NCBI RefSeq assembly: GCF_003704095.1
Contig: NW_020846126.1
Coordinates: 186,001-250,000 of the forward strand
Length of the DNA: 64,000 bases
Source of the DNA: Pocillopora damicornis
Taxonomy: Eukaryota
Direction: 5' to 3'
The notes below the pieces were generated by a model. That model did no database searches. It saw nothing but the letters and a program-made list of their open reading frames with translations, and had not been told where the DNA came from. Each line of letters starts with the position of its first letter. Position 1 is the first letter of the stretch. A program made the translations under genes and the position numbers. Positions 15,909 to 48,095 of the stretch are shown here, in pieces.

Positions 15909-17115
15909 TTCTAGTGGAAACCAGTCATCCTCTCTTGTCCTAGACTCAGTTACGCAAAAAGTCGTCAGCTTATCAACCTCAATTTTTTTATATTAATACT
16001 GTTGTGATAACTTTAGGAGTTCCAGCCAAACCACACCGAAAGAATAGTAAAATATGTAGCCCTGAACAAAATGTTTGTAAAAGTAGCACTTTATGATGAA
16101 ACGAAGAAAAGATGCAGGTGTCTGTGATGTCATTTGATATCTCATGGATACTCAGTTAAACCGTTAAGGAGACAGAATATATTTCAGCCTTTGTGCGCAA
16201 CTTAAAAAATTTGTTTTGAAGAGATTAGGATATTCAGCTGAAAAAATAACACAATCTTTTTCGCGGTAAAATAACGGTAACGTTATNNNNNNNNNNNNNN
16301 NNNNNNNNNNNNNNNNNNNNNNACTTAGATAAACAGATTTTTAAAAGAGGAAATTGTCAGTGAGTTACCCTCTCTCCCGAAATGTTTTTGAAAGAGGTTA
16401 CCAGAATCATTTTTGTTACATTTTGAACAAACACCTATTCATAGAAGTGCAAATAAACATTTAGGTTTTGAGTGTTAAACGGACAAACAATTTGTAAATA
16501 ATCATGTTACCTGCAAACAAAATAATGGAGTATAACTTGCTCTGTTTAGAGTACATCAGGGTTAACTGTTTTGATCCAGTTGCGTAAATGAAGAACGGCT
16601 TGGCTGAAAAAGTCTTACAACCTGAAATCTGAGTCAGACACCAACTAAGACTTTTTACGTCTATGTTATTTATTATCTTCCTGAGGATCATTAATGATTG
16701 AATACATGAAGCTCATCAGGTGTAATGTGCTGTGCCCTCGCTTATCGAAAAAAATAAGATGATATTGCGACATCTTTAAATTGACGATGAAAGAATTTCG
16801 GTTTCCAATTTCAATAAGCCCAAGCCAGGATTTTGTTGCTCACTAAGTTCTCCATAGGAAAAAGTCAGTTGTGGTTCATTTTCTAACTTTCTAATGTTTC
16901 AGAATCCAATCTACTAACACATGACCAGCACCTGTCAATCGGCCGTCAAAATTTGACCTTCGATCACCACAGGCGGTCCAAGCTCCAACCATGAGGTGAT
17001 CATCTTGCGAAGTAAGAGTCATGGCGAAATCATAAAAGTTAATATGGGAATATTTACGACCGCTCTTAGGAATAAAAAAGTACAGTCGAATTCTTAATAC
17101 CACGCTTTACTTTCA

Positions 17116-17870
17116 CAGTGCACTGCTTGTTATCTGACCGCTTACTATGTTAAATAGAATTCGCCATTGTAGCGAGTTATCCATTTCTAGGTTTACTACA
17201 TANNNNNNNNNNCTCTTATGTAGTACAAAGCTTAAGGTGCTGCCTCCTTACAGTCCGTTTCTCAACATCGTGGAACAAGCGATCAGTAATCTTAAAGCTG
17301 TAATCAAGGCCGATATCTCTCAACCTGGCACTCAAGAGGAGTAAAACAACCGGGAAGAAGCAAGACGTTAAGGCATTCCACTGGGAGACTATCACCAAGG
17401 AATTCTGTTATGACCATGCAGGCTGAAGAAATATGAACGCAATAACTGTCTGAAAATACGCTCAATTATTTAGGTTTATGCAAACCTATATCCTGTGTTG
17501 CTTAAACCGCGAAGCAATATAAGGATAGGCTATTACTGGAACACAAACTTACTTGAAATTCTTAAGTTGTTAATGTAGCTGAGAACTGATTGCACAACAA
17601 CATTAAAGATTGTACTTTAATTTAAAATGAAAGTATATTTGTGTAAATGAATTTTTGTATTTATGCAAACAACCTAAATGAAATTTAAATCTGTCATAAT
17701 GATTGTCTTCTCTTAACTTGATAACACTTTCGTGTTATTTAACTTAAATGTAGCGCTAATTAAATTTATCTTGCGTTCCTGAAGGGCAAACGGTGTAAAC
17801 CTAGAGATAGATGACCCGCTAAAATGGGTTCTTTTCAAACACAATAACATAGTAACAATAACAAGCAATG
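17116..17870 (+). mobile_element. Decayed Tc1/mariner (IS630-Tc1, DDE_3) DNA transposon remnant with imperfect terminal inverted repeats
   Basis: LPPYSPFLNIVEQAISNLK (third acidic residue of the DDE motif) at ~17230-17300, followed by stops. 17164-17198 (ccattgtagcgagttatccatttctaggtttac) is an imperfect reverse complement of 17793-17827. Similarity extends outward to ~17121 and ~17870. An N-gap lies at 17203-17212. Confidence 0.75.
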
Positions 17871-18219
17871 NNNNNNNNNNNNNNNNNNNNNNNNNNNNNN
17901 NNNNNNNNNNNNNNNNNNNNNNNNNNNNNNNNNNNNNNNNNNNNNNNNNNNNNNNNNNNNNNNNNNNNNNNNNNNNNNNNNNNNNNNNNNNNNNNNNNNN
18001 NNNNGATGATCATCTCACGGCTGGAGCTTGGGGCACCTGTGGTTTGGCTGGTTAAAAAATGAGTTACTGAACTTAGAGCAGTCTAGACGGTCTAAGAGTT
18101 GTAGGAAGAAAATACATTCNNNNNNNNNNNNNNNNNNNNNNNNNNNNNNNNNNNNNNNNNNNNNNNNNNNNNNNNNNNNNNNNNNNNNNNNNNNNNNNNN
18201 NNNNNNNNNNNNNNNNNNN

Positions 18220-19622
18220 TATAACTCAGTATTTTTGTTCGCGATAGACTGAAGCGAATGAGGGGGACTGGGTCGAGATCGAGACAAAATTCAGCTCTCA
18301 GTTTCTATCATCATACTAACCATATTTTACCCCGTCTTTTCATAAATAGACAGCAATTACGTGGTAACACAAAGCGAGGGGCTGCATATCGAGGACTTGG
18401 CACCATTACTCGTATCCCCGGATGTTGCAGACAGGTTTTACAAATACAAAGGATCTCTCACGACTCCTGGGTGTTATGAATCGGTCACGTGGTTTGTGAT
18501 GAACAATCATCCACAAATAACAGAGCAAGAAGTAAGAAATCATCTTTACACAAATATTTTCCAACATCACACCTTAGATTTCTTGAAGAAGGAAAACTTT
18601 GGGAGGATGGCTTTCTCAGTGTAAAGTTATATACAATGTGAAGTCATCGAAAACACGAAGACTCGCAAAAATTTGACTGTCCTCCTTCCCAGTTTTCAAA
18701 TCCCATTTCAGAAATTAAGAATAATCTATCTCTTCGTCACTCTTAACGTTAAGAGTCAAGATTTTAAAAGAAACAACGGAAAGTTTCAAACCACTTGAAG
18801 GATTCAAACCTGAGGAACTTTTAGAGATTTTTTTAATCCAAGCGCTGTTTTTTCATCTTGAAAATAGATAATGGCATTCCGAAATCTAAAGAGCAGCAAG
18901 GCGCATGCTCAAGGTCCAAATGTTGGTCGTATGTGCAATAACTTTCGAAACGTTATGCCACTGAATGGAAGACAGATCCATAGCAACATTGTCCTAGAGT
19001 GAACAGAAAGTATCCATCTTTGTATTTCTCATATCTACAGTAAGGTGAGTGTGTCTTAGAACAGACATGAATAATTCAGAGCGTTTTAAAATAGCTGTGT
19101 CACAGAGACCGCCTGACGATCGTGGGTTCCCTTAAACTTTTTTTAGTATTTCTCGCAGAAGTGTTTAAAAGGTTTCCCAAAGTTTTTTTTTTTGCAAATT
19201 TTTTGTAAAAACCAAAACAAGTATCAAACATTCACAGATTTGTTCTCAGGCCTGGTTTTCAGATATCACCGAGGAAGAAAGAGATTGGAGACGCGGTTGT
19301 GTGCTTTCACAACGGTCATACATTGAAAATAATAATCAATGCGACGAGAAAAGGAGATGGTAACCAGGAAATTAAAATGTAACATAGGATTAAAAAAGGA
19401 TTGGCCCTCGAGAAATAAATGATAATATAGAGTTCATGTATGTGACAGGTTCTTGTAACATTTTCGATATTTTAGGTTGATTGAAGTTCTAACAGGTGAA
19501 AGAAATCCGGGTGGTAACAAGAAGGACTGGCACGAGCTCATGTTAACCATGGCTGGAATAAAGGAATGAACTGTTATATTATGCTGTGACAAGTTGCATT
19601 AGTTTTCTTCCTCTAAGAAGCA
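18220..19622. repeat. Inverted duplication of ~12904-13979 (3' half of the carbonic anhydrase gene plus flank)
   Basis: Direct reverse-complement match including introns and 3' flank. This copy carries extra blocks at ~18573-18791 and ~19498-19601. Confidence 0.9.
18350..19002 (+). CDS. Alpha-carbonic anhydrase copy B: last two coding exons only (18350-18531, 18868-19002); 5' part absent or hidden in assembly gaps
   Basis: Near-identical inverted copy of copy A exons (YKGSLTTPGCYESVTWFV; NFRNVMPLNGRQIHSNIVLE*), with intact splice sites. It begins right after the N-gap at 18120-18219. Confidence 0.7.
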
Positions 19623-19859
19623 TGTTTGAAGGAAAGTTCTATAGATCACTCCAAAGACGAACAATTAGTGGAAACATGTACATGTAATCCAAATGATGCA
19701 GACGCCTGTTATAATCATAAAAGGTCTTATGATCTTGCAATTTCTGCCTCCAGTGTCTGTTGCTTTTTTCCCTGTGAAAGTCAAGTTAATGATGAGTAAT
19801 TTTGGTTAAGTAAACTGGAACCGGAATATGATCAGAGCGCTCGCGGCATAGAATTGGTT

Positions 19860-20047
19860 GGATTGCAATGAGTGCTAATCCGTGCATGCAAAATGCAGCT
19901 ACAAGACATACTTGTATATGAGTTAATTTGTTAAATACATAATTATTGTAAATCCCACGATCTGCATTGCAAGCATCGCCATCCGACTCCAAAATGCTGG
20001 CATTCAGACGGCTTTCTTCAATATTGCAAGCAATCCCAGAAGTCCAC
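19860..20047 (-). pseudogene. Inverted, frameshifted fragment of the 21211-22044 membrane-protein gene
   Basis: The reverse complement matches ~21515-21697 (FNKLTHIQVCLVAAFCMHGLAL). It has a 1-nt deletion (tatttaac vs tattttaac), is truncated on one side and abuts the N-gap on the other. Confidence 0.75.
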
Positions 20048-20147
20048 NNNNNNNNNNNNNNNNNNNNNNNNNNNNNNNNNNNNNNNNNNNNNNNNNNNNN
20101 NNNNNNNNNNNNNNNNNNNNNNNNNNNNNNNNNNNNNNNNNNNNNNN

Positions 20148-20490
20148 TCCTTCTCGTTCGGTTCACAGGTGAGTTCGTTCATAGAACAGATTCGTGAACC
20201 TCTCGTTTGCTTTTGACTTTTTCATTTCATCCCTCGCCAGCAGTTGGATCAAAACCAACGTAACAACGAACAAGTATTTTTCTTCACCAAAAACAAACAA
20301 CAGAATGAAAATGCCAAGACATTTGGTAAAAGTTTCAGTTTCTAGCGGCGTGAATAAATATCAGGATCATCCGATAGCTGATAACTAAGACAGTTTGTTA
20401 AAGTAGTTTATTCTTGCGGATACCATTTGGCCTCTCCTTCTCGGTTCACAGGTGAGTTCGTTCATAGAACAGATTCGTGAACGTCTCGTT
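20148..20490 (+). repeat. ~60-bp direct repeat (20148-20210 and 20436-20491) containing a CAG|GTGAGT splice donor
   Basis: cggttcacaggtgagttcgttcatagaacagattcgtgaac occurs twice. The first copy abuts an N-gap. Confidence 0.8.
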
Positions 20491-21210
20491 TACTTATTTT
20501 TTTGTTTTGTTTTAGTTTTTTTTTATTTCCAGGTCTACCCACCGCCCCTTGATTAACGGTGACCCTAATATTCTTCAACCTGGGGGGTCGATCGATCCAT
20601 CACACAAAATGTTGAATATAATTAATTACCGTACGATTGGTAACAATCTGTCGGGCGATTTTTATGGCTCAGGGGAAACTTTGATCCATTTTAAAAAACA
20701 TGACAAAACTCTCGCGCATTTACGAGCGCTAGTGAAGCAGATTGCAAACAGATTCAGTCGTTCACAGTTGTTTGAAAGATAATAAAGAAGGCGAGACATT
20801 GATTGTTCAAACTTCTTTAGGTTAATTTAAAACAAGGGGTTGGGGTGTGTTTTATTTTAACTTCAACTTTTGCCGCAATGATTCAGAATTAAAGAACTGA
20901 TTAATTTTTTACGAACGAAATGACGTTCGAAAATGAAAAACAATAAAAGGAATGTGAATAATAAGCATAAAGATAAGTATTAGAGAACATGATCTGCGAT
21001 CACAGTATCAGCTGTATGAGTTATGTTTTGAAATGAGGCTTACTCATGTTCTAACAAAGTCTGTCTTTTTGTTTTATTTTATGAAAATTGGAACGCAAAA
21101 AGTTTTGGATCTTTAACTAAAACCTTTTCGTTTTTTAACAGGAAAGAAGCAAAATCCACCTGAAGCACTTTGATAAAATGGTTAGTTCTGTAAACTAACT
21201 GGCATCCTGG

Positions 21211-22044
21211 ATGGAAACCTTACCTTTGATAATCTCGCAAACGAAAAAACAAGACCGTTTTTGCGACAAATCGAAGTTGCTTCTCAGCAACCTTGCCCGT
21301 TGCTGTTTTGTTCTTCTTCTCCTGTGGCAGATTATAGGGACAGTTCTTTACTTCCTGCGTGCCTACGATTGCTGTTTAAGGGATCGACACGCAACATTTA
21401 GTTGCTCAAATTTTACAAAAATTCCTCACTCTAAAGAACTTGAACTGACATGGCTGGTCTCCCAGGACATAAGCATTGGCTTGACAGCATTTGCCCTGAG
21501 AAAAGTGCCTGAATTTATGGGATTTCGCGCAATATTGAAAAAAGCCGTCCGAATGCCAGCATTTTGGAGTCTGATGGCATTGCATGCAATGCAGATCGTG
21601 GGATTTACAATAATTATGTATTTTAACAAATTAACTCATATACAAGTATGTCTCGTAGCTGCGTTTTGCATGCACGGATTAGCACTCCTTGCAATCCTTT
21701 TCGTGCTAAATTTTACGCCGATAAATCGAATTAGACGAAGGCGTAACTACTTTGTTTTTATACTCCTCAAATTCACGTTACTGGTATTTTTCGTGCAAAC
21801 TTCTACAATCTTTGTAGTTGGATCCCTTCAGTTTACTTTTAAAGTCACTGGTTTAGATGAGGTGGGACGATCAGCTAATTTCGTGACGATTTTTCGAAAA
21901 CTTCGAGAATTTCCACAAGTTATTTTCTTCTACAGGACAGCAACTTTCTTCTGGCACAAGTTCTTTTTGGATAGTAGAAATATACTCAGCCATTTTCAAA
22001 TGCTGAAGTCAAGGAATGATATTTCGAATAGATTTCATGAATAA
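21211..22044 (+). CDS. Uncharacterised multi-pass membrane protein (277 aa, about 6 TM)
   Basis: Intronless 277-aa ORF with regular hydrophobic segments and a Cys-rich first loop (YDCC...FSC). An acceptor at ~21141 suggests a 5'UTR intron. No family recognised. Confidence 0.75.
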   Translation: METLPLIISQTKKQDRFCDKSKLLLSNLARCCFVLLLLWQIIGTVLYFLRAYDCCLRDRHATFSCSNFTKIPHSKELELTWLVSQDISIGLTAFALRKVPEFMGFRAILKKAVRMPAFWSLMALHAMQIVGFTIIMYFNKLTHIQVCLVAAFCMHGLALLAILFVLNFTPINRIRRRRNYFVFILLKFTLLVFFVQTSTIFVVGSLQFTFKVTGLDEVGRSANFVTIFRKLREFPQVIFFYRTATFFWHKFFLDSRNILSHFQMLKSRNDISNRFHE

Positions 22045-22558
22045 GAGTATTTTTCTATCGACCCCCATGAAACTGAAACCAAAATAAGCCACTGATTTGC
22101 ACAACGGAGAGAGGGTGAGACTACAGATTTCAAATTAATGAAATGTTTGACACCTTGGCATAACTCTAAAATACCCGTTTAAGAAACGAATAAAATATTT
22201 TTGAAAGTAACTTTGACCAATAAATCAAGGAATCTTCATTCGTTTGTTTTATTTTGGAAGATTAAAACAGAAGTTAATAAGATCATAATAGGAATGAAAA
22301 CAGTACAATAGTATTTTTTTTTCTGACAGAAGATTTTCTCCTATGACAAAACCTATATACAACATAGATTTTAAGATACAGTCCTGTATATAAACAAAGC
22401 AAGGATTGTAATTATAATTGAAAGAAACTGTACATGATTTAGCACAAGCGGCGGTTCTTTCCCTTTGCAGGCTATCGTGTATAATGGTAACTGGTTTATA
22501 TATGATAACTTTTATCGAAAATAAATGTTCTGAATAAAGAAGTGAAAGAGTAGTTTTG

Positions 22559-25500
22559 TCATGCAATTATTTCAAGATAGGACAGTTCGTCTTCAGAGCA
22601 CTTATGACTTTCAGCATTTTCCTTACCAGCCAAAATGATGTTTACAGGTTCCTCGTAATCGGTGACCAAAGCTTGATAAGCACGACAATTATCACTCTCG
22701 TTGTTCTGTTCAGTTGAGTCCGTTTTTAATGCACTGTAGTCTTTTGTCACCTCTCTATTTTCTCTGCCTTTATTCAGCGGGTATTTACCTTTGAGTTCAT
22801 CGCTGCTCTTTCGTCTTATTGCTAACCGCCTGGAGATTGAGAGTTCTCCAGGAGTTTTGCACGGGGAAGCGTATTGAACGTTTCTGTTTTCATTGTTTGC
22901 CGATCGCTGTAACAGGTGATAGTTCTGATCTTCGCAATCAGGCGAGTCTTGAAAATGCACTTTTAGCTTGTTGACTTCGCGGAAATTGTTTGCCCCATCA
23001 TCCTGTTTGCGAAGAGATCGTGTCTGTGCGTCATAATAAAATGGCTGTGCAGTTATGTCGCCGTTTTGTTTGCGTGTTTTCATTTTCAAGCGCCAAAGAA
23101 GGAAGCCAATGACGCAAACTAAGACCAGTATCACGCAAACGAGCGGAATTATTGCGATTGTCCAATGGATGAAGCCGGCAGGAGGCTGAACTGAATTAGA
23201 AAAAGAAAACAAAAATAAATGAAAACGTTTAGGGGACGGAGAAAGTTTAGTGGAGAGGATAAATTAGAGCACCTATTCAGCTGTGGGGCAAAAAAATCAT
23301 AATACGGCCAGCAGAACAAACACTAGTTTTCCGTTTGTGTGGGTGTGACTCCCGCTTCGCCGTTGGCGCTTTAATCGAATGAGTACGGTGTAATATTTAA
23401 GATACTGTCTGAACTTTTCTTGTAACTGACATTTGTAGTCAGTGACAAAACTGGTGGTCACTGTGCTCAAGTTGATCGCTACTCGATCGGTTCTAATTCG
23501 CACAAAAAATACTAATTAAAAACATGAATTCACGTTTCTGTGAAACATATCCCTTACCTTTTCTTACCATGGAAATAATATCAGTATTGCTGGCTCGCGT
23601 GTTTTTTTCAGTTCTCAACGTCGGTGGCGTTTGTTTGCTACTTGTGCCAGATGGAACTGCTCTGAATACTTCAGTGATCTTGCAGGTTAAACCACTTCTT
23701 GAACACTCTGTGAAACGAGTTCCACAATTAGTTATATACAAGGGCAAGTGGCAAAGAATTCAACGTGTTTGTCCGGTTTGTGAAATTCCCCTCATGGCAA
23801 CACCCGTCTTCTTTTCTTCCGAGTGTGTCTTTACGTAGCTGCTCGTATTCCTTTACCCAGGCTATATCTGTCTGCATTATATATTTAGCAGTTCTAAATA
23901 ATTTTTCGAACAAAATGGGTTTGATTTGAGTGCTGTCACTTTACTTTTGGTTACTTATTTGCGCCTTGTTATACACAAAGTAGAATAGTTGACATCCACA
24001 TTTAAGTCAAATACACGGTTGTAATCAATCTAAGACAGAGCTCATATGAGGTCATCATGCGTTATAAACAGTCTGGAATGCTAACGAGTTACTGTAGCTA
24101 ATGCCGAAGATTTCAAACTAAACTAATCCCATTTCTATACACATCCCCACCCCTAACAGGATTTCCTTTTGGATATAGGATGGGGCTGGCGTGGGTGTGT
24201 TGGAATGCGACAAAGTAACAAACTTACGAATAAACACTAAAAAAACCAACAAGGAGTCTGTCAGACAAACGAATAAAGGGGGTAAGTTTCTAAAGAAACT
24301 GTTGTGCTGCGTCTGTAAGAGAGCACATCAGGATCATTTAGTATTATCAACTGAGTTGATAACGTAAATTGGCCAGTAAATTGCTTAGGGTTGCTTGGGG
24401 TTAGGGTTAGCTTTAAACCCTAAAGAGTTTAAAGGTGACGTTTCGAGCGTTTCGAGCGTTTCGAGCGTTCACCTTTCATCAGAGAGATCGCCATCGCGCT
24501 GACGAAGGGTTAACGCTCGGAACGTCAGCTTTGAAACTCTTTCACGTTATCAACTCAGTTGATAATACTAAATTACCCTGTCAGACAGACAGACAGACAC
24601 ACACATAATGCAAAACAGGATACCAATGGCCGAACAATATTTAATAAAGCAACGCACACACCAGAGGGTATTTCGCAGATGAAGCCGGCGAAAATGTTTC
24701 CTCTTATGTCATTAAAAAGCCCCCTAGTTCCCGGCGGGTAGTTTTTCGCCATCACCACATACGGCGCACCATCTCGAGGCTGCCAAGGCTGCCAGTGGTT
24801 AATGGTTAGTGGCTTTCCATTCACCCAGGTCCAGGTCCAGTTCCCTATCACTGTGGTGTTCCTTCGCAAACCGATATGCCAGTCATTGTTGAACTTGTTC
24901 GTCAGGTTTTGGATGTAATCTCTTACAACTTGCCATTCATGTGGTGTTTCCATGGAGACAAGGTCTCCTCCGTTAGATTGACACGACTGTCTGGCCGCAG
25001 TCCATGTGAGCCCGTCTTCGTGGAATGTGTAGCATGAGCAGTCCGCGGCATAAACTGTACAAGCAGATCACAAATGACTTATTACAATGATTTCTAGAAG
25101 CTTCGGAAACAAATATTCAGCAGTTATTCCCTCCTTTAACTGCAATGAAAGACGATGGCTCCAGTTATAAAATTGAGACTTGCCGCAGTTCTGTGAACTG
25201 GTATGATGTTCTACGAACTGGTATGAGGGCCGATAAAGCGTTGTCGTCGGGTGAGAAAATCTGCTCTCAAAATCTCTTAATCATTGAACAAATGTAATAC
25301 CATTCATTCTCTGGTAGCGGTTAACGAAAGGACCTTTTAAGCTCATTTAAAAATAGATCTTTGTTTTTACCGTAGAACATAGACGCGGCATTGATTAGTC
25401 CCATCATCTCTTAAATCTAAATATCGTAATTCTGAACCGTCGAAAGGGAAATTAAGGCTTTCTTGATATTTGTGGTTGTTTAGAGCACAAGCGCGGATAT

Positions 25501-27120: not shown

Positions 27121-29085
27121 TTAAGTCTTGATCGACTTCGTCCATTGTCTGGCTTTAATCTCTCCGCGGAGCTTGGTCTTCCTCGGATCGTCTCTAAAAG
27201 ATATCTTTGAGGAGTCAAATTCTAGCAAGAGTAAAACAAGGCTTGTTACACTTTGAACCAGAATGTTTCCTAAGGGAAAGTGATTTTAAAGATGAGATGA
27301 GTTTCCAAACACAAACCTGTTCATTGTTCCCACCATTTGAGAGCAGCTTTGCGTTCCGCAGATTTAACCCCAGTTACTAGAAAAACACACATAAAAGTAA
27401 TTTTTAGTCTCGGGGTCTAATACGTTTGGCTAATTGCGTACTTACGAGCAGTCTAGCTTTTAATAATATGAAACACAGTCCAGATTTTTTTGCGCACCAT
27501 ACAGAAATCGCAGCAGAAAAAAAAAGGTCGTTCCGTATGGGGCAAAAAATGTACCCTTGGTCTTGAGCATAACAAAGATCAAGGCTATCTCCTAACTTCG
27601 GGATAATTTTATCCATAAACCCACTGTAGAGATGAAAGCAGGGTTAGTTAGTGTTCCGGCAGACCTGTCGTCGTGCACACAAGAGGACAGTCAATAAGTA
27701 CATACTACGATTTTACAGCAATGTTTGACTGACCAGCGTAGACAGAATTTCTCCATCGTCCACCACAGGACTCAAACGAATTTTCAACGTACTCAACAGG
27801 ATCGTCGGGTTTTCTGCACTTAATGTTACATTCCTTATCATCAGCTCGGCCATACTTGTCAAAAGTATTCCCACAGAAACAAAGATCACCGTTTTGCAGA
27901 CCAGCGTAAGGAAAACCTCTGTCAGCGCATTGGTCAACACAGTCTTGTTTTGAGGAAAAATGCTGAATTTCATATCCAAGTGCTCGAGGCTGCACCAGGC
28001 GGAAGTTGTCATCCAGCGCCTTATCGTCCTTATAACAGCCAATCATATCTGCAAAGATGACATATTAAACTTTTGACGTATAATGGAATACCTTAACCGT
28101 TCATACCGTGTGTGATGAGAGATTTTTCCTATTTATATGTTGAACTGACCTAAAGGTACGCTTTATTTAACGGACAGATACGACGAAACTTCATGGTTTA
28201 GTCAGTGCGCAAGTGCAGAACAGCGAAACTTGCCTCGGTTTGAAACAGAGACAAATAACAATGTCGGAATTTTTAACCGCAGTTGTAAAGCTCTGTCAGC
28301 GTAAAAGACTCACAGGCATGTACAGTTTTACTAAGATGTAGGGGAAAAAGGCAAAGGCAAAATATTCCGTTTTTATCAAAAGCACGACTTATCTGGAAGT
28401 TAAATCTAAGTGAGGTCAAAAACTAAAACTATATAATCTTTACACAAACTGACAAACGAGATTTGAATGTTTTTTGTAAAGAAGTGAGGCACACTGAAAC
28501 TAAATAGGTTACCTGGGTTTGTGTCCACAACTTCTATGTAGGAATACGACAAACCTGGTGATTTCAAAAAGGAAACGTATGTGGCACCTGTTATGGTGAT
28601 AACACTTTTGACTCAATAAGTGGATCTGATCGAGTGTTCTCTTCTGAAATTACACGGTCCTGTTCGCTTCAATGCATCAGAAGATCAACACATATATAAC
28701 TCAAACATCAGCACTTTCTCAGGATTCTACCTTTTTGAGGTGTTTGTCTGCCAAAAAAATTCGCCTTTATTTCGTAACTTCATGTTTGTATTTTTCAACT
28801 AGGTATACAAATCAGGTACCACTTGTTAAAACCTTCTTCTCCAACCTGGTCGCTAAAATGGGCTGTCTGATTTAATTTTGGTAAAAAGCACCGTTTTTAG
28901 GATTCGTTAACTCCTCCTTACATCCAGCACAGTTTTTTAAGTTTTTGAATGGATTAGAGAATTTCGACTAGTTAATTAGGGTTCTGAGACTACTTACCAA
29001 TTAAAGAGAAGATCCCAAGGACGAAGGCTGAAAAGTATAAAAAGCGTGAAAATTCTGGAATACGTGGAAATAAAAGCATTAACAT
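27121..29085 (-). CDS. Small secreted WSC-domain protein (~181 aa); exons 29085-28998, 28554-28513, 28048-27734, 27221-27121
   Basis: Hydrophobic N-terminus and WSC pattern IGCYKD...CVDQCADRGFPYAGLQNGDLCFCGN...YG....ECNIKC...ESCGGRWRNSVY. The four exons total 546 nt and are all joined by phase-1 introns. Confidence 0.85.
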
Positions 29086-30641
29086 CTCCAAAGACACATA
29101 CCTGAAACTCTTCGCAAAAACATTTTGAAGACTTAGGCTTTTCCCACGAGAAATCAAACTTTCCCGTTGGGAAGATTTCCTATCTGTGTCGACTCTATAC
29201 ACTATTAATGATCACAGGTGAATGACGCGATCTCCACCAATTAGCGCTACGCTAGATTCAATCGTGTTTAACTTAAACAGTTTCCTTATGAGCTAAGTTC
29301 ATAATATAGAGAGTAAGGAAACGTGTGCAACAAACGAATTGTGACCACGTGCAAAGGATTTTATGGGGTAGCTCACACTGGACAGTTATTGTCTGGAGTT
29401 ACGAGCCGTGAAAACTGCAGTAAAACTTTTGAAGTGTCCTCTTAAAAAAATAAAAAATAACCTTCAGGGGTCACTGGTTCTAATGATGTGTGGGATTTTT
29501 TTGAATCGAACACAATTGATAGAGTGAAAACGTTAAAATGAAAATAAGACATCGTGTAAAAATGTGGTCTTAGTTCGGTCAACCTCGCGGGCTTGTCTTC
29601 AGGTTACTCACATGAAGAACTATTTATCTTATGGTCATTATTCAACTTTAGATTTTCGCCGGTGGAGAACAGTTGACGGATGTTTTAAAACGAGTAACGG
29701 GTATGTATATGTACCTGCATGTGTTGACACTGAAACATGAAACAATATTTGTTATGACAGTTTTCGTGTTGAACATTTAAGCAAAATTTGTCAATAAAAA
29801 CTGGTGTTGTTTTATGTAAAAAGCTTTCCGCTAGAAAACGAGATTCGTGACGGTTTTTTGAAGTTGAATACTTGGCTTGTATAGGTGACATGAAGTGGGT
29901 ACCAACTTTTTAAACCTGCTACTTTTCTTGTGATTCGGCTCCATAATGACGAAACTTTTTTCCGGGCCAAAAGAGTGGAAACCACATTGCCAGGATCTGT
30001 TAGTCACCATGCGCGCTTTGCTTTCAATTTTGAGGGCGTTAGTACACTTTGAGCATAACAACTTACAATGGGTCCATGTATCGTAGTCATGGGAGTTGAA
30101 AAGAGAGTATGAACTGTTCATATTTTCTTGGAGTTGATTAACAGATTCAGGTGCCCTGCTGTTATCATTGTATGATGGTGTTTTAAATAAATTTAGGAGC
30201 TTTTGGATATTGAAATCATTGTGCATTTGAAGGCTCCTCTCTCTGATTCTTCCCATTTTCCCTAAGAATGACAAACATTTTAGTAGCTCCCCATGATAAT
30301 TCGATTGTGTTTCCAGATAGCCCAAAGTTTAATTTGTTAATTTCCAAAACCCGTCGCGTAATCGACCCAACAATATACTCAGACCAGCATAATTCGCTTA
30401 TCACTTCGCTTAGAACTTTCTTCTGTTTTTTTGCAACTGTTGAGCTGTAATGAGAGAACATTTTAATTTCAGATTACTCTACATGATAGGGAAAGTCTTT
30501 ATTACATTCATTGTCACTTTTTATCTTAAAAAAAATATCAAAAGAAAGTTTTATGAACAAAACACAAAGCTAATACCCCTACATAACTAAATGACAGAGT
30601 AAATTTCTCGAAGATGGGTTCATAGGTGGAAAAAGGTGTAG

Positions 30642-31097
30642 TTATTCTTGTACGGCTCCGTTCTGGTAAGACTTATCCGTGGCCGGATAATTAAATGGGG
30701 GATAATACCCATGTTGCATTTGATAATCACTTAACAAGAACCAAGCCACTTCATTTGGCTTGGCACATGTTAACCAACGAACAAAAATTGATTTCCATTT
30801 GTTCCTTGCCGGGCCGCTCAAATATCGACCAATTGGGAGGCCATCGTTCCCACTGAAATGAGCATTTAAACAGTCCCGGATGTTCGCCAGGCAGGGGTTT
30901 CCCCCAATGTAAATGACTCTGGAGTCTTGGGTGATCTCGTAGACACCAGGCAAGCGAGTAGACTCGTATTTGTCGTTAATGTCAAAACTTCGTAAAGCCG
31001 AGGTAAGAGGACGAGCGTTCAAGCGTTCACGGTAGTATTTCATGTTGTTCAAGTCCTCTTCTGTGGCCTGGTAGTCGTATGCATCAACATAAGCCAT
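30642..31097 (-). CDS. Stand-alone GIY-YIG-fold protein A (151 aa, intronless CDS, probable 5'UTR intron ~31117-31432)
   Basis: PGVYEI-x6-IYIG, NIRDCLNAHF helix and C-terminal LL..Y...HG..PPFN match the GIY-YIG layout. It is a paralogue of 33449-34374. Confidence 0.85.
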   Translation of the reverse strand: MAYVDAYDYQATEEDLNNMKYYRERLNARPLTSALRSFDINDKYESTRLPGVYEITQDSRVIYIGGNPCLANIRDCLNAHFSGNDGLPIGRYLSGPARNKWKSIFVRWLTCAKPNEVAWFLLSDYQMQHGYYPPFNYPATDKSYQNGAVQE

Positions 31098-33448
31098 TTT
31101 CTGACGGAAATGCCCTTAAAAATATTTAAAGAAACAGTGAAATTCATTCCATGACAAAAGTACGAGGAAGACAGTACGTAAAGGATAATAATGGTGACCA
31201 AGACTGTGAGAGTAAACGTCAGAAGTTAGTAAAAAAAGGAAGGAATAGAGCTTGTTGCTAATGAAATAAGGAAAAAATGTTTGTAGTCAATTAGAGAAAA
31301 GGACCTCAAACAGTCTTCACAGGATTCGCTCTACCATAAACTTAAGCAGGCTTTATTAATAAAGTCATTCTTATGAAATACACCCTCCAGTAAAAGACTT
31401 AAAAAGTTCACAGACGTTAAGAGTTTCTTTACCTTCCACCTACAAATCAGCCTCAGGCTAAGGATTTTCTCACAAAGCCACGACATTAAAACCTCATTAC
31501 ATAATGTAATGCATCGAGCAGAGCAACTTGTTCTATTTTATTTTCATAAACCTGTAAAATTGCATATAAATTGTTGCGAAAACTGGAAAATGCAAAAACT
31601 TACTTTTACATTAGTCTCCTTTGATAACACTCAGGTTTATTCTCGTAAATCTTCAACTCCTCGTTCTTCCTTCTGTCAATTTTTCCGTTGAGACGGTTAA
31701 CGGTTGCAATTGGTTTTGGTGCGTGATTTAAAACCCCATAGATGTGCGCGCGCAATTTTCTTGCAATACATCGACTGATCTCAAGTGTGCAAGATTGGAA
31801 ACAATCGAAAACAAAGGCGCATTGGAAAGGAACGTCTTAAATGAGTTGAAATTTTTAACTCGTTCGCAAATGGTCTCCATAAGGGTACCTTTGTATCTGT
31901 CTACAACAAAGGAAATGCAGGACTCACTTCCATATTAGTTTAGTAACTCTGATTGTTAATCTTGAAGTAGAGAGTATTCATTAAAAGCGTTTTTCAAACA
32001 TTCCCCACCAAACTATTGTTTTGTCCAGCGCTCTCTTAGTTTTCTTTAATCAATCTTTGCTTCCTCCTCCTTTCTCTCATAAACTTCAATAGTCTTCTCT
32101 TTCCAAAGAGCACTGTTTGCCAGAATATTTTCACGCAAATCAAAGCAATACCCGTGAACAATATCAACAAAAGCCATTCCCCATTAATACTCAATAATAT
32201 AACAATTCGAAAATATGCCACAAGCAACAAAAAGTCAAACAAAACTCAAACCCGTCTGTTAAAGGTTTGCGTGATTGAAATTTCATTAGCGTGATAATTT
32301 TTGGAAGTTTGCAAAACATACAACAATTTTAGTGTTTCGCCCAGGTCATGAAGATTTTTATCCATTTCCGTTTCAAATTACAGAAAAGTTAAAACTTTGT
32401 GTATTCGTCTGCAAATCTCTTTTATGAAGAAAGTTTTCTTAAGCTCTTGCCTTACCATAAAATCTAAGGTCGATTTTTCCAATGACGGAGAATCACGGTT
32501 CTTTAAGATACTATTACATGATTTTTCTCCCATTGCGTTATTTTCACCGCCGACCGTTGTTCATCAAGTCTACCACAATTATCTTCCTGTGCTGCGGTTA
32601 CTCAAGAGACGTGTTTTACTTCTGGGATTTAGATAAGTGTGTCGGTGTACGCTGTGTCATAGCCTCCCCAAGTTCAGTGTTGTGAAAGAAATCTTACTGG
32701 CACTGCGAGTTGGGTTCCTCTGTGGTTGAGTCGTGCAAAAAACTAGATTTAGAGGTTTTCACCTCAAGGAATCAATAATACCGGAATTCTTTAACCGCTG
32801 ATATTAGGAAAAACGATTGCAGTTTCTATGTCGTGGTAAAGGTTATGATTATTACGTAATATTATAATCGAATTTCGGTACGGCGCGTGCGCTTCATCGC
32901 TGTACTCGATCAGTTTTATCCGGTAGCATTTTGAAGTCAACATAATTGATTTACATGGATGATTTGATTTAAAGCTATCGTTTCTTTAAATGAAAATTTT
33001 GGCTCAAACAGAAATTTCGCCTAACTATTGTCGGAAAGGAGAAATTTTAAAATTATGATGCGTACCCATTATGTCACCGGTTAATTGAACGTAACTTTGT
33101 TGCTAGGCCACTGAGATATATTCATTCGCCGCCAGCCTGCGTGAAAAGCTCTTAACTATTTCTAAGAATTTTGAAGAACAAAAGCTGTGTTGAGGTATGT
33201 ACGATTCAGCTGTAACGACAAACTCTCACCACAACAAGACTTTTGTGCTTGTTTTAAGTTTTAAAGGCATCATTGCAGTTGTAGCGTTTGTAGGATGTAG
33301 TAACAGCATTAAGATAGAGATTCAGAATTTTTGATATGTTCATCAATGTTTGAAAAAACTCAGAAAGAAAATCGATGTTTACATCCGCGGAAATATTACA
33401 TTCTAAAATGATTTTCTGTTTTTTTCTTAATGGCTGAAGTAAATCGAA

Positions 33449-34374
33449 ATGAAGAGATCCGGGCTAGAGACAACGGTCAAGGAAACAGAAGTGGATCAAG
33501 ATCACTTTAAGGTGATTCGTTTCTACAGAGAAAAAATGAACCAACAGCCTTTACACAGTGCACTCAGAAGCTTTAATATACAAGATGGTGTACGTATGTC
33601 TGGAGTTTACGAGATTCATAGAAATAACGAGGTAAGCGTTAGGATCTTTGTAGATTATGGGCTTTTCGGCAACGACTACCTGCATGGAGAGATTTCGAGA
33701 GATTGCACGCGAGTTTTACAAAAAAAGCAAACTGTTAAGTTCAGATTAGTTTGTATTTCAATAATAATACCTTACTGAGAAAAAGCCAGCTTCGGAGTAA
33801 GGCAGAAAAGGAAAATGTCTGAGATCCCTCCATCTCGATGTTATATGTTATATTGTTTCCTATGATCGACTTGGCATCGGAGTTTTCAAAGCCGTCATGT
33901 CTACCCGGCTTTGGTTCGTCTCCTTTGCAGCTGTTGTGTGGTGTCGTCAAGCAAAATGCTCTTGTTTGGTCCCGTCACGTTGCGAGGGCATGTGTTGCGT
34001 GACGTTACCAAATAGCAGTTGCAAAGAAGACACAGCTTTAGCTAGCCCCGTAGAAAGTTGTCATAACGCAGTTGTCTTATGATATCATAACGCAATTTTC
34101 ACAGATCATCTACATCGGAGGGAACCCTTATTTTAGCAACATCCGGGACTGTCTAAATGCTCATTTTAGCGGAAATGATGGACTTCCTATCGGTCGATAT
34201 CTTAGCGGCCCTGGAAAGCGACGCTGGAGGAACATTGCTGTGCGATGGTTGACTTGTCTGAACCCCCCTGAAATAGTGTACTTCTTGTTAGAGGATTATC
34301 AACTGAGGAATGGCGCGTTACCGATTTATAACAACGCTCCTAATGTTCAGTCAAGAGATTGGGATTGTGACTGA
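33449..34374 (+). CDS. Stand-alone GIY-YIG-fold protein B (150 aa); exons 33449-33631, 34105-34374
   Basis: A phase-0 GT-AG intron joins SGVYEIHRNNE to IIYIGGNP. A 25-aa block is identical to paralogue A. A probable non-coding exon ends at the donor at ~33194. Confidence 0.85.
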
Positions 34375-34629
34375 ATTTACCAAGAATCTCTATCTCGTAC
34401 ATCGGGTAGACTTGGGGGTATTTGTCGCTGGGAGCTTTTAAATTCGAAATATCAATAATTTTGACTTTCATTATTTAACCCGCAGAAATGCCTGAATAAA
34501 AGTCATACACTTCGATCTATGGTGTCTTTTGTAGATTTTAAATGTTCAGTCCTTATTGTCCCCCTGCTGTTGTAAATGGAATAGGATGAGTGCATTCTTC
34601 TGTTTACACCTGATAGTCCATTGTTCTTA

Positions 34630-34811
34630 AGGTAATTTAGTGTTAACAACTGAGTTGGAAAGCTCTGACGAAGGGCTAACGCTCGAAACATCAGCTTTTT
34701 TACCCTTTACGATGGCAAATTTACGTTTTCAACTCAGTTGTTAACACTAAATTACCTGCTATACTCTCCCACTGACGCAGCACCACAGTTTCTTTAGAAA
34801 CTTGCCCATTT
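34630..34811. mobile_element. Penelope-like-element-derived hairpin repeat
   Basis: 32-bp inverted repeat (34630-34661 / 34726-34757, one mismatch) enclosing a hammerhead motif. The tail gacgcagcaccacagtttctttagaaactt matches the reverse complement of 24283-24313. Confidence 0.7.
34659..34698 (+). ncRNA. Minimal type I hammerhead ribozyme motif (Penelope/retrozyme type)
   Basis: aaagct-CTGACGA-a-GGGC-taac-GCTC-GAAA-c-ATC-agcttt: 6-bp stem I, conserved core, 4-bp stem II, NUH triplet AUC and essentially no stem III. Confidence 0.6.
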
Positions 34812-35098
34812 ATCTATTATTCATAAGTTTGGCAGTTCACTCTGACTAAAATTTCCATACTAGAAAACTCGCGCACGCCTCAATGATATATCCGCCAGCC
34901 AAATTTTCACTTTGTGCAGGCTCAACCGTTACGAAGATATTTCTGCGGGCGCCATTTTCCAAACTCTTCCTTCGTTACGTTGTATTAGTTACCGCCACGA
35001 ATTTTCACGGACCTCCTGATTTCCAGCAGTTTGAAAGAAATGCAGATATATTTATTTTTCCTGGTGAGAAGTAAGTTCTAGGAGGTTTCTTTTTGGAG

Positions 35099-48095
<12,997 letters not shown>

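What the first reader, a model, noticed from the sequence alone, without database searches (positions are those of the whole stretch)
30642..34374. Head-to-head pair of conserved stand-alone GIY-YIG-fold genes that look like pseudo-nucleases
Seen: two divergently oriented ~150-aa paralogues lie 2.35 kb apart with the GIY-YIG layout (GVYEI-x7-YIG ... H ... P-x-x-N). They have no RT, transposase, UvrC, LEM/ankyrin or SLX1 RING partner domain. A 25-residue block (NIRDCLNAHFSGNDGLPIGRYLSGP) is identical in both, yet 11 of its 25 codons differ synonymously and none non-synonymously. This indicates an old duplication under strong purifying selection. Both have spliceosomal gene structure. Established: GIY-YIG catalysis needs Arg27 (4 residues before His31) and Glu75 in I-TevI numbering. 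Here the residue 4 before His is Cys in both copies. The usual E-x-x-L-[IL] reads A-W-F-L-L and V-Y-F-L-L, with a conserved Glu two residues earlier, while Tyr/Gly/His/Asn are kept. Inference: a domesticated, possibly prokaryote-derived GIY-YIG family repurposed as a nucleic-acid or damage sensor, redox-sensitive (Cys) binder, or heterodimer. I do not recognise it as a described animal family.
Basis: partly seen in the sequence, partly recalled or inferred. Interest (0 to 1): 0.85.

Follow-up and report, generated by a model that had tools for sequence, protein, structure and literature searches.

The report
Paired coral GIY-YIG genes lacking catalytic arginine
Two neighbouring, oppositely oriented coral genes encode small proteins with the fold of a GIY-YIG DNA-cutting enzyme, but the arginine that such enzymes need is a cysteine, so this old, conserved, expressed cnidarian family probably no longer cuts DNA in the usual way and its job is unknown.

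Summary
Gene A (30642-31097, minus strand, 151 aa) and gene B (33449-33631 plus 34105-34374, plus strand, 150 aa) are divergent paralogues. They are the only two copies in a 234-Mb genome that appears to be Pocillopora damicornis.

- **Expression and selection:** both genes are spliced and present in poly(A) RNA. dN/dS against Stylophora is 0.04-0.21.
- **Age:** the head-to-head pair also exists in Stylophora and in the sea anemone Actinostola, so the duplication is ancient.
- **Fold:** AlphaFold models of A and B match only GIY-YIG nucleases at the top of an unbiased PDB scan. Profile searches link the family to small mollusc and coral GIY-YIG proteins, prokaryotic DUF7508-like proteins and UvrC.
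- **Arginine:** the invariant catalytic Arg is replaced in every cnidarian member: Cys in 38 of 40 anthozoan clusters, Ser in 2, Ala in jellyfish.
- **Glutamate:** In the register shared with DUF7508 and UvrC, an invariant Asp/Glu (D124) sits at the Glu position.

My best reading is a host-domesticated GIY-YIG module that is non-canonical and probably does not cleave DNA. A re-tooled active enzyme is not excluded. No Pfam model covers the family and I found no paper describing it.

The parts
30642..31097 (-). Gene A coding sequence, 151 codons plus stop, with no intron in the CDS. It encodes a stand-alone GIY-YIG-fold protein. Landmark residues: Y53, Y63, R74, C76, H80, E116, A118, D124, N136.
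   Evidence: ORF. Paralogy to B. AF2 model pLDDT 82.4, pTM 0.77. The top 7 of 48,161 PDB chains are all GIY-YIG nucleases, Z 7.9-5.6, and the next hit is Z 3.4.
30576..31114 (-). Gene A last exon as seen in RNA (short 5' UTR part, CDS, 3' UTR). The 3' end is not defined; one contig runs on to at least 30300.
   Evidence: RNA contigs: X7 record 15 and X1 record 1. The AG acceptor at 31116-31115 is read on the minus strand.
31115..31603 (-). Gene A 5' UTR intron, 489 nt, GT..AG on the minus strand.
   Evidence: Joint 31113>31603 (cut +1) in RNA contigs of two runs. It is well anchored in X7 (side 72).
31604..31674 (-). Gene A proximal 5' UTR exon. The contig ends at 31674 in adapter sequence.
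   Evidence: X7 record 15 and the loose end at 31674.
32456..32828 (-). Probable alternative distal 5' exon of gene A, spliced to 31114 with an intron of 1341 nt. Support is weaker than for the proximal exon.
   Evidence: One joint in run X1 (side 28). RNA contigs cover 32357-32828 in three runs, and one of them starts exactly at 32455.
32829..33077 (.). Gap of at most about 250 bp between the outermost transcribed ends of A (distal exon) and B. This is a candidate shared bidirectional promoter, and it is an inference.
   Evidence: Ends of the RNA contigs. If only A's proximal 5' exon is used, the gap is about 1.4 kb.
33078..33194 (+). Gene B non-coding first exon. Its 5' end lies at or before 33078.
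   Evidence: RNA contigs X1 record 5, X7 record 17 and X8 record 24.
33195..33439 (+). Gene B intron 1, 245 nt, GT..AG, in the 5' UTR.
   Evidence: Joint 33192>33438 (cut +2) in three runs from three studies. AG at 33438-33439.
33440..33631 (+). Gene B exon 2. The CDS starts at 33449 and this exon holds 61 codons.
   Evidence: The N-terminal part is 47% identical to A.
33632..34104 (+). Gene B intron 2, 473 nt, phase 0, GT..AG. It lies between the GIY strand and the YIG strand. Stylophora B has an intron at the same position (533 nt).
34105..34508 (+). Gene B exon 3. The CDS runs to 34374 (89 codons plus stop), followed by 3' UTR to about 34508.
   Evidence: Spliced product equals P0011. AF2 model pLDDT 79.8. 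The top 7 PDB hits are all GIY-YIG nucleases, Z 8.2-4.6, and the next hit is Z 3.2.

Best explanation
A and B are two ancient paralogous host genes of a cnidarian-restricted, unannotated branch of the GIY-YIG superfamily. Each encodes only one GIY-YIG domain with an N-terminal helix. The domain is closest to the small stand-alone Eco29kI, DUF7508 and UvrC-N-terminal types.

Shown here:
- The fold.
- The homology chain to bona fide GIY-YIG domains.
- Two copies per genome.
- Transcription and splicing.
- Strong purifying selection.
- A duplication older than the stony-coral radiation.
- A head-to-head arrangement shared with a sea anemone.
- Replacement of the invariant catalytic arginine by Cys (Ser or Ala in some lineages) in every cnidarian member. 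Both tyrosines, the His, the Asn and an acidic residue (D/E124) at the UvrC/DUF7508 glutamate position are kept.

Inferred: in solved GIY-YIG nucleases that arginine positions the attacking water and holds the scissile phosphate. Without it, these proteins most likely no longer hydrolyse DNA by the canonical mechanism. They still use the conserved pocket and the invariant loop after the His (H-F-S-G-N-D-G-L-x-I-G) to bind a phosphate-bearing ligand, most plausibly nucleic acid. I therefore read them as a non-cleaving binder or regulator. The two may be expressed together and may act as a pair.
For: Fold:
- AF2 model of A has pLDDT 82.4 and B 79.8.
- An unbiased scan of 48,161 PDB chains puts only GIY-YIG nucleases in the top seven for both models, followed by a clear drop in Z.
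- Foldseek against the PDB and the ESM Atlas agree.

Homology:
- The family profile matches mollusc and bacterial small proteins. Three of them pass the Pfam GIY-YIG threshold.
- hhalign of the family against these kin: 99.5%.
- hhalign against the DUF7508-like prokaryotic set: 98.7%. That set against UvrC: 96.8%.

Arginine loss:
- C76 aligns with the Arg four residues before His in every alignment.
- The position is Cys in 38 of 40 anthozoan clusters, Ser in 2, and Ala in 3 medusozoan sequences.
- The Arg's catalytic role is described in PMC3045582. It is part of the superfamily definition in PMC1564403.

Host gene, not a mobile element:
- Two copies in 234 Mb.
- dN/dS 0.04-0.21.
- Conserved neighbours: WSC gene, A, B.
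- Spliced poly(A) transcripts.

Age:
- The tree places sea-anemone A-like sequences with A (support 93/86).
- An AU test rejects a clade of coral A plus coral B (p 0.007).
- Actinostola has the divergent pair on one contig.
Against: - No activity or binding data exist.
- Five of the six classical active-site positions may still be occupied (Y, Y, H, D/E124, N). That pattern is unusual for a dead enzyme and fits a modified but active site.
- R74, two residues before C76, is conserved in most members and might reach into the pocket. I could not test this because the tools return no model coordinates.
- The isoelectric point of the domain varies from 5.5 to 9.4 across members, which gives no consistent signal for DNA binding.
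- Pairing of A with B is only weakly supported: median ipSAE 0.38, runs 0.00, 0.50 and 0.38, best control 0.00. The tool states that a pass of this strength is more often wrong than right unless the pair was already likely.
- In Porites, B is not within 10 kb of A.
- The bidirectional-promoter reading depends on a distal exon seen as a joint in one run only.
Confidence: 0.5

Rival explanations
1. A and B are still enzymes with a re-tooled active site. The conserved Cys (or Ser) lies one helical turn before the His. Together with Tyr, Tyr, Asp/Glu and Asn it would support phosphodiester or another transfer chemistry, possibly thiol- or redox-gated or using a different metal.
For: - The rest of the pocket is invariant under strong purifying selection.
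- Cys is kept in 38 of 40 anthozoan clusters, and the only substitute there is Ser, a classic nucleophile swap.
- D/E124 occupies the UvrC/DUF7508 glutamate column.
- Sea-anemone A-like members carry C-x-C at this site.
- The best structural hit for A is the redox-linked GIY-YIG domain of the plant glutaredoxin AtGRXS16. That link is a resemblance only.
Against: - Jellyfish members have Ala and the most distant members have Val at this position, so a nucleophile is not universal in the family.
- No GIY-YIG enzyme is known to work without the Arg (PMC3045582, PMC1564403).
- No geometry could be checked.
Confidence: 0.25
2. A and B are fully dead pseudo-nucleases. Both the Arg and the Glu are lost, and the fold is kept only as a protein-interaction or scaffold module, for example an A-B heterodimer that regulates another factor.
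For: - In the E-x-x-[LY]-[IL] register, all 14 Arg-bearing kin have Glu 18 residues before the Asn: 12 tabulated and two coral ORFs read.
- All 30 cnidarian sequences tabulated lack that Glu (A, V or R).
- Two Haliotis proteins lost both Arg and Glu independently.
- There is a published precedent: the GIY-YIG-like domain of ANKLE2 has no nuclease activity (PMC13179284).
- Co-fold of A with B: weak support, 0.38 against 0.00 for controls.
Against: - The rival register has better profile support. DUF7508 column 75 matches UvrC's catalytic Glu, and the family aligns to the DUF7508-like set without gaps.
- The GIY and YIG motifs, His and Asn are strictly kept here, unlike in ANKLE2.
Confidence: 0.2
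3. The ORFs are parts or relics of a mobile element (a Penelope-like element endonuclease, a homing endonuclease or a transposon), or a recent bacterial contaminant or transfer.
For: - The genome holds at least 33 other Pfam GIY-YIG matches.
- A dispersed repeat sits just downstream of B.
- The nearest non-animal kin are prokaryotic.
Against: - Only two copies in the genome.
- Spliceosomal introns and poly(A) transcripts.
- Orthologues in syntenic positions in Stylophora, Porites and Actinostola.
- dN/dS well below 1.
- No RT or transposase next to them.
- The profile found no long fusion proteins among 1.84 billion representatives, apart from one spurious repeat protein.
Confidence: 0.03

Closest known systems
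UvrC N-terminal GIY-YIG domain (PDB 1YCZ, 1YD6)
   Same: - Same fold: Z 6.8-7.0, rmsd 2.8-3.0 over 83 of 89 residues.
- The kin profile hits UvrC at E 3.7e-7.
- Same G-x-Y and Y-x-G hairpin, same P-x-x-N ending, and 12 residues between D/E124 and the Asn, as in UvrC.
   Different: - No UvrC C-terminal domains.
- The catalytic Arg is Cys.
- Eleven extra residues lie between the His and the Asn, including an invariant S-G-N-D-G-L-x-I-G loop.
- It is a eukaryotic gene with introns.
R.Eco29kI and T4 endonuclease II (stand-alone GIY-YIG nucleases with an N-terminal extension)
   Same: - Best or near-best structural matches. These matches cover the N-terminal helix as well (Eco29kI Z 7.3 and 8.2; EndoII Z 7.8 and 6.4).
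- Eco29kI-family clusters are the nearest ESM Atlas models (TM 0.62-0.65).
   Different: - No detectable sequence similarity to either.
- The Arg is absent.
- No restriction-modification or phage context.
Pfam DUF7508 (PF24348), small prokaryotic GIY-YIG-like proteins
   Same: - hhalign 98.7%, E 2e-16 against a DUF7508-like set, ungapped over the last helix (P, L-L, D/E-Y-Q/K, G, P-x-x-N).
- Some prokaryotic members also lack the Arg: Burkholderiales have Ser, and Bathyarchaeia have Asp or Thr by my reading of the ORFs.
   Different: - No cnidarian member reaches any Pfam hit.
- The middle region (I-G-x-Y-L ... W) is shared with the mollusc proteins and not with DUF7508.
Small stand-alone GIY-YIG proteins of molluscs (Tegillarca, Haliotis) and two canonical ORFs in this coral genome (G000 contigs C3862 and C3500)
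   Same: - Closest animal relatives: profile E 3e-7 to 2e-4; hhalign 98.5-99.5%.
- Same length, same H-x-S-G-x-D-G-Q-x-I-G motif and same Trp in the linker strand.
   Different: They keep the R-x-R-L-x-x-H arginine and a Glu 18 residues before the Asn. They are very basic (pI 9-11) and lack the acidic residue 12 before the Asn.
ANKLE2 'Unc-1' domain (GIY-YIG-like, experimentally not a nuclease; PMC13179284)
   Same: An animal protein with a GIY-YIG-like fold that lacks key catalytic motifs. It is the published precedent for a GIY-YIG pseudo-nuclease.
   Different: - ANKLE2 has lost the GIY and YIG motifs themselves and is one domain of a large LEM/ankyrin protein.
- Here the motifs are intact, only the Arg (and perhaps one Glu) is changed, and the protein is the domain alone.
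AtGRXS16 N-terminal GIY-YIG domain (PDB 2LWF)
   Same: Top structural hit for A (Z 7.9, 100 residues aligned) and third for B (Z 6.6).
   Different: It is fused to a glutaredoxin domain in a plant chloroplast protein. No sequence relationship was detected here.

Membership tests
GIY-YIG nuclease superfamily | Beta-hairpin carrying the GIY and YIG motifs with their two tyrosines | tested here: met
   G51-V-Y53 and Y63-I-G65 lie on strands 51-57 and 60-67 of the model. These positions are invariant in the family.
GIY-YIG nuclease superfamily | Three-dimensional fold: hairpin, arginine helix, linker strand, glutamate helix | tested here: met
   The top seven of 48,161 PDB chains are all GIY-YIG for both A and B, followed by a drop to Z 3.2-3.4. 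Foldseek agrees.
GIY-YIG nuclease superfamily | Invariant Arg on the first helix, four residues before the His/Tyr | tested here: not met
   C76 in A and B aligns with that Arg. The position is Cys in 38 and Ser in 2 of 40 anthozoan clusters, and Ala in jellyfish.
GIY-YIG nuclease superfamily | Metal-anchoring Glu on the last helix | tested here: inconclusive
   There are two registers.
- A118 (V in B) aligns with the Glu conserved in all 14 Arg-bearing kin.
- D124 aligns, via the DUF7508-like set, with UvrC's catalytic Glu.
No model coordinates were available to decide between them.
GIY-YIG nuclease superfamily | Conserved Asn after the last helix | tested here: met
   P133-x-x-N136 is invariant.
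GIY-YIG nuclease superfamily | Match to Pfam PF01541 above its cut-off | tested here: not met
   No Pfam hit for A, for B or for any of 30 members. Kin found by the family profile do pass it: P0066 31.2 bits, P0067 27.6 bits, P0070 25.7 bits.
GIY-YIG nuclease superfamily | Metal-dependent nuclease activity | not testable with these tools
   Needs a biochemical assay.
Pfam DUF7508 (PF24348) | HMM score above 26 bits | tested here: not met
   No hit for cnidarian members. There is only profile-profile similarity to a DUF7508-like set (98.7%).
Penelope-like element endonuclease or other mobile-element nuclease | Linked RT or transposase, and many dispersed copies | tested here: not met
   Two copies only. 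Transcripts of about 0.6-0.7 kb carry this ORF alone. The neighbours are a WSC-domain gene and a NEK-like kinase.
SLX1, ANKLE1, UvrC or Cho | Partner domains: RING; LEM and ankyrin; UvrBC and Endo V/HhH domains | tested here: not met
   The proteins are 150-151 aa, and the single domain plus an N-terminal helix fills them.

The most novel reading that the evidence does not exclude
The family is not dead. It would be a new catalytic variant of the GIY-YIG fold. The invariant arginine has been exchanged for a conserved cysteine (serine in one lineage) sitting one helical turn before the active-site histidine, while Tyr, Tyr, Asp/Glu and Asn are retained. That would give a thiol- or redox-gated chemistry, or a mechanistically different one. 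It would be used by an ancient, co-transcribed A/B pair throughout sea anemones and corals.
Probability: 0.15. Interest if true: 0.75.

Novelty: new variant of a known kind. Interest (0 to 1): 0.5.

Why it matters
GIY-YIG domains in animals are known from SLX1, ANKLE1, the degenerate ANKLE2 domain and Penelope-like retroelements. This family adds a stand-alone, two-gene, cnidarian-wide branch. It has been kept under strong purifying selection at least since before the split of sea anemones and stony corals, yet it lacks the one residue described as invariant in the superfamily.

It is a clean natural test of what a GIY-YIG pocket can do without its arginine: bind only, or catalyse differently. 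It also gives a name and a fold to genes now annotated only as uncharacterized in Pocillopora, Stylophora, Acropora, Montipora and Exaiptasia. The same arginine loss in Haliotis proteins and in some prokaryotic DUF7508-like proteins suggests the change is recurrent.

Tried and rejected
Searches that gave nothing or were set aside:
- **Direct family and structure searches.** Pfam and NCBIfam scans of A, B and 30 family members gave no hit. A family-profile search of PDB sequences gave only chance hits at E about 2.
- **Transposon reading.** Rejected on copy number, synteny, introns and selection.
- **P0048.** This 2,598-aa protein has 13 matches to profile positions 59-89. It lies next to PKD and Por-secretion genes on a metagenome contig, so I treated it as a spurious repeat match.
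- **Literature.** I found no paper on this family by gene identifiers, by 'GIY-YIG' with cnidaria or coral, or by 'pseudonuclease'. Two papers mention unnamed 'GIY-YIG' transcripts in Nematostella and Montipora. Neither could be tied to this family.

Heterodimer test:
- Complex prediction gave weak support only: median 0.38, best control 0.00. By the tool's own counts a pass at 0.60 or under was reached by only 5 of 78 solved complexes and by all 4 mismatches that passed.
- I do not claim that A and B bind each other.

Glutamate register:
- I tried to settle it from secondary-structure spacing, hydrophobic periodicity and indel parsimony against UvrC, I-TevI and Eco29kI numbers. Those numbers partly come from memory.
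- The arguments cancel out, and I left the question open.

Other:
- The search for related loci with a three-sequence alignment failed for lack of conserved stretches. I repeated it with one protein.
- The joined coding sequence of gene B was never typed or sent to a search. Its exons were searched separately by reference.
- For folding, the tree and the co-fold I used the identical database protein P0011.
- Exons were joined only inside scripts, for the identity check and for dN/dS.


Full report
**What is in the sequence.**
- Gene A is a single 151-codon ORF at 30642-31097 on the minus strand.
- Gene B, on the plus strand, has 61 codons (33449-33631), a phase-0 GT..AG intron of 473 nt (33632-34104), and 89 codons ending at 34374.
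- A script showed that the conceptual splice of B is identical to database protein P0011, named Pocillopora damicornis LOC113676808.
- The window's contig is 314,640 bases long, which is the length recorded for P0011's contig. The assembly has 234 Mb in 4,393 contigs. The genome is therefore P. damicornis or something very close to it.
- A and B are 67% identical over the C-terminal 82 residues (E 5e-43) and 47% over the N-terminal part.
Exactly 11 of its 25 codons differ, all synonymously.

**Transcripts.** RNA contigs from poly(A) or oligo-dT libraries of three studies were laid on 30300-34700.
- Gene B is transcribed as three exons: about 33078-33194, 33440-33631 and 34105 to about 34508. 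Both introns are GT..AG and both joints appear in all three runs that carry the spliced B transcript.
- Gene A has an intron-free coding exon (31114 down to at least 30576) joined to a 5' UTR exon at 31604-31674 across a 489-nt intron. The joint is seen in two runs and is well anchored in one.
- One run also joins the coding exon to a distal exon at about 32456-32828.
- If that distal exon is real, the outer ends of the two genes lie at most about 250 bp apart, which would indicate a bidirectional promoter. Otherwise the gap is about 1.4 kb.
- These data are assembled contigs, so they show presence and splicing but not expression levels.

**Host genes, not mobile elements.**
- A six-frame search of the whole genome with A found only A and the two exons of B.
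- dN/dS between Pocillopora and Stylophora is 0.04-0.06 for A and 0.12-0.21 for B. Synonymous sites between A and B are saturated.
- The region from a WSC-domain gene (27705-28046) through A and B to the NEK-like kinase start (35093) is colinear with Stylophora.
- In Stylophora, A (single exon) and B (same intron position) are also head to head, and the WSC gene lies beyond A.
- Porites has A next to the WSC gene, but B is not within 10 kb.
- The sea anemone Actinostola has a B-like and an A-like gene diverging from each other on one contig, with a 721-aa gene between them.
- In the tree, sea-anemone A-like proteins group with coral A (support 93/86). Coral B forms its own clade (96/99).
- An AU test rejects a clade of coral A plus coral B (p 0.007). 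The group was named after the tree had been seen, which is a caveat.
- The duplication therefore predates the stony-coral radiation and probably the split between anemones and corals.

**Distribution.**
- The 40 close homologues are, wherever named, hexacorals: Porites, Stylophora, Pocillopora, Acropora, Montipora, Desmophyllum, Exaiptasia and Actinostola.
- A profile search of 1.84 billion representative proteins found only 39 proteins at E up to 0.001.
- Beyond the hexacorals these include a jellyfish protein (Sanderia), small proteins of the bivalve Tegillarca and the abalone Haliotis, and short metagenomic proteins. One of the metagenomic proteins sits among bacterial genes.
- A distinct 11-member clade (P0024 to P0035) comes from unnamed assemblies.

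**Fold.**
- AlphaFold2 gave confident models for A (pLDDT 82.4, pTM 0.77) and B (79.8, 0.73).
- The order of elements is an N-terminal helix, two strands, a helix, two short helices, a strand and a long helix.
- An exhaustive structural comparison with 48,161 PDB chains put seven GIY-YIG nucleases in the first seven places for both models: the AtGRXS16 N-domain, T4 EndoII, Eco29kI, UvrC, PD-T4-3, I-TevI and Hpy188I.
- Z was 7.9 to 5.6 for A and 8.2 to 4.6 for B. The next hit was at Z 3.4 for A and 3.2 for B.
- Foldseek against the PDB and a viral library, and the ESM Atlas, point the same way.

**Sequence bridge.**
- No Pfam model hits any of the 30 family members tested.
- Three proteins found by the family profile do pass the Pfam GIY-YIG threshold, and one of them also passes DUF7508.
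- Profile-profile comparisons gave:
  - family against mollusc and bacterial kin, 99.5%;
  - family against a DUF7508-like prokaryotic set, 98.7%;
  - family against the mollusc and coral canonical set, 98.5%;
  - prokaryotic set against 27 UvrC N-domains, 96.8%.
- The kin profile hits the UvrC structure sequence at E 3.7e-7.

**The arginine.**
- The superfamily is defined by the GIY and YIG motifs, an Arg in the centre and a Glu near the C-terminus (PMC1564403).
- In the Hpy188I-DNA complexes the 'invariant arginine' holds the attacking water and the scissile phosphate, and the Glu anchors the metal (PMC3045582).
- In every alignment made here, C76 of A and B falls on that Arg. The kin read R-x-R-L-x-x-H where the family reads I-R-D-C-L-N-A-H.
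- The position is Cys in 38 and Ser in 2 of 40 anthozoan clusters, Ala in three medusozoan sequences, and Val in two very distant ones.

**The glutamate.** Positions are counted back from the conserved Asn (N136 = 0).
  - All 14 Arg-bearing kin have Glu at -18, in an E-x-x-[YL]-[IL] motif. Twelve are tabulated and two coral ORFs were read.
  - All 30 cnidarian sequences tabulated lack it.
  - Two Haliotis proteins that lost the Arg lack it too.
- *The other register.* UvrC's catalytic Glu lies 12 residues before its Asn. In UvrC from locus L023 these are E79 and N91, and N91 falls on Pfam PF01541 profile position 78, which puts E79 at about position 66.
  - The Pfam DUF7508 model, run on bacterial genomes, repeatedly aligns UvrC so that the match ends on that Glu at model column 75.
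  - By my count from the ranges, column 75 is the Glu at -12 of the bacterial relative P0067.
  - The cnidarian family aligns with the DUF7508-like set without gaps over this helix. Both share P at -22, L-L at -15 and -14, D/E at -12, Y at -11, G at -6 and P at -3.
  - D124 is Asp or Glu in all 25 anthozoan sequences tabulated. Jellyfish have Tyr or His there.
- The tools return no model coordinates, so I could not superpose the active sites.
- I judge the -12 register somewhat more likely, at roughly 60:40. The Glu loss is therefore unproven.
- The perfect co-occurrence of the Arg with Glu at -18 is real. A structural partnership between the two residues would explain it as well as a catalytic role for that Glu.

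**What it probably does.**
- The invariant Arg is gone in the whole clade, so canonical hydrolysis is unlikely.
- The rest of the pocket, the loop after the His (shared with the mollusc proteins, so older than the Arg loss) and R74 stay under strong constraint.
- My preferred reading is a non-cleaving module that still binds a phosphate-bearing ligand, most plausibly nucleic acid (confidence 0.5).
- A re-tooled enzyme is the main rival.
- A co-fold of A with B gave weak support only: median ipSAE 0.38, runs 0.00, 0.50 and 0.38, best control 0.00. The tool's calibration says such passes are more often wrong than right without a strong prior. I do not claim binding.

**Origin.**
- The coral genome also holds two small canonical GIY-YIG ORFs of the mollusc type, with both Arg and Glu. 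They are on contig C3862 (124 aa, above the Pfam GIY-YIG cut-off) and contig C3500 (138 aa).
- A wider animal family of small stand-alone GIY-YIG proteins therefore exists, and A and B are a derived branch of it.
- The nearest non-animal relatives are prokaryotic DUF7508- and Eco29kI-like proteins. A prokaryotic origin is plausible but was not tested with a rooted tree.

**Novelty and score.**
- I found no paper describing the family.
- The closest published parallel is the inactive GIY-YIG-like domain of ANKLE2 (PMC13179284). That domain has lost the motifs themselves and is part of a large protein.
- I rate this a new variant of a known kind, with interest 0.5.

Noticed in passing
window 34632-34812: This stretch is absent from the otherwise colinear Stylophora region. 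The alignment jumps from 34631 to 34813. The RNA-contig word depth of the bin 34563-34700, which covers its start, is far higher than that of its neighbours (4,300 to 23,000), with many loose ends. It looks like a dispersed repeat inserted downstream of gene B. It overlaps the scan note on a hammerhead-like hairpin.
   Followed up: partly
G000 contig C3862:35726-36100 (L015 2727-3101, minus strand) and contig C3500:4092-4508 (L016 2593-3009, plus strand): Two further small stand-alone GIY-YIG ORFs (124 and 138 aa) in the same coral genome keep the canonical Arg and the Glu at -18. They resemble the mollusc proteins. One passes the Pfam GIY-YIG cut-off. Whether they are expressed or linked to a mobile element was not checked.
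   Followed up: partly
window 27705-28046 (-), 24573-24953 (-), 35093-35236 (+): Neighbouring exons: a WSC domain (E 3e-15), a weak C-type lectin match, and the start of a NEK-like protein kinase. The WSC gene is also the neighbour of gene A in Stylophora and Porites.
   Followed up: partly
proteins P0063 and P0064 (the latter named as Haliotis rufescens, 331 aa, several loci): Two relatives, of which P0064 is named as abalone, have independently lost both the Arg (Thr or Ala) and the Glu at -18. P0064 carries a long Cys-rich N-terminal extension. This parallels the cnidarian change.
   Followed up: no
L017, L018 (Burkholderiales MAGs) and L019-L021 (Bathyarchaeia MAGs): Prokaryotic DUF7508-like domains are fused to other domains: an N-terminal domain of about 130 aa in the bacteria, and a C-terminal region of about 150 aa with CxxC pairs in the archaea. 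They also lack the canonical Arg (Ser, or Asp/Thr). Loss of the Arg in this subfamily may be recurrent.
   Followed up: no
L004 6447-8612 (Actinostola): A 721-aa gene with no Pfam hit on record lies between the divergent A-like and B-like genes of the sea anemone. The B-like gene there may carry a frame problem near its N-terminus, because two overlapping tblastn pieces lie in different frames.
   Followed up: no
L012 2-7798 (JGI metagenome contig): A 2,598-aa repeat protein next to PKD and Por-secretion genes matched profile positions 59-89 thirteen times. I judged it a spurious match to a repeat.
   Followed up: partly
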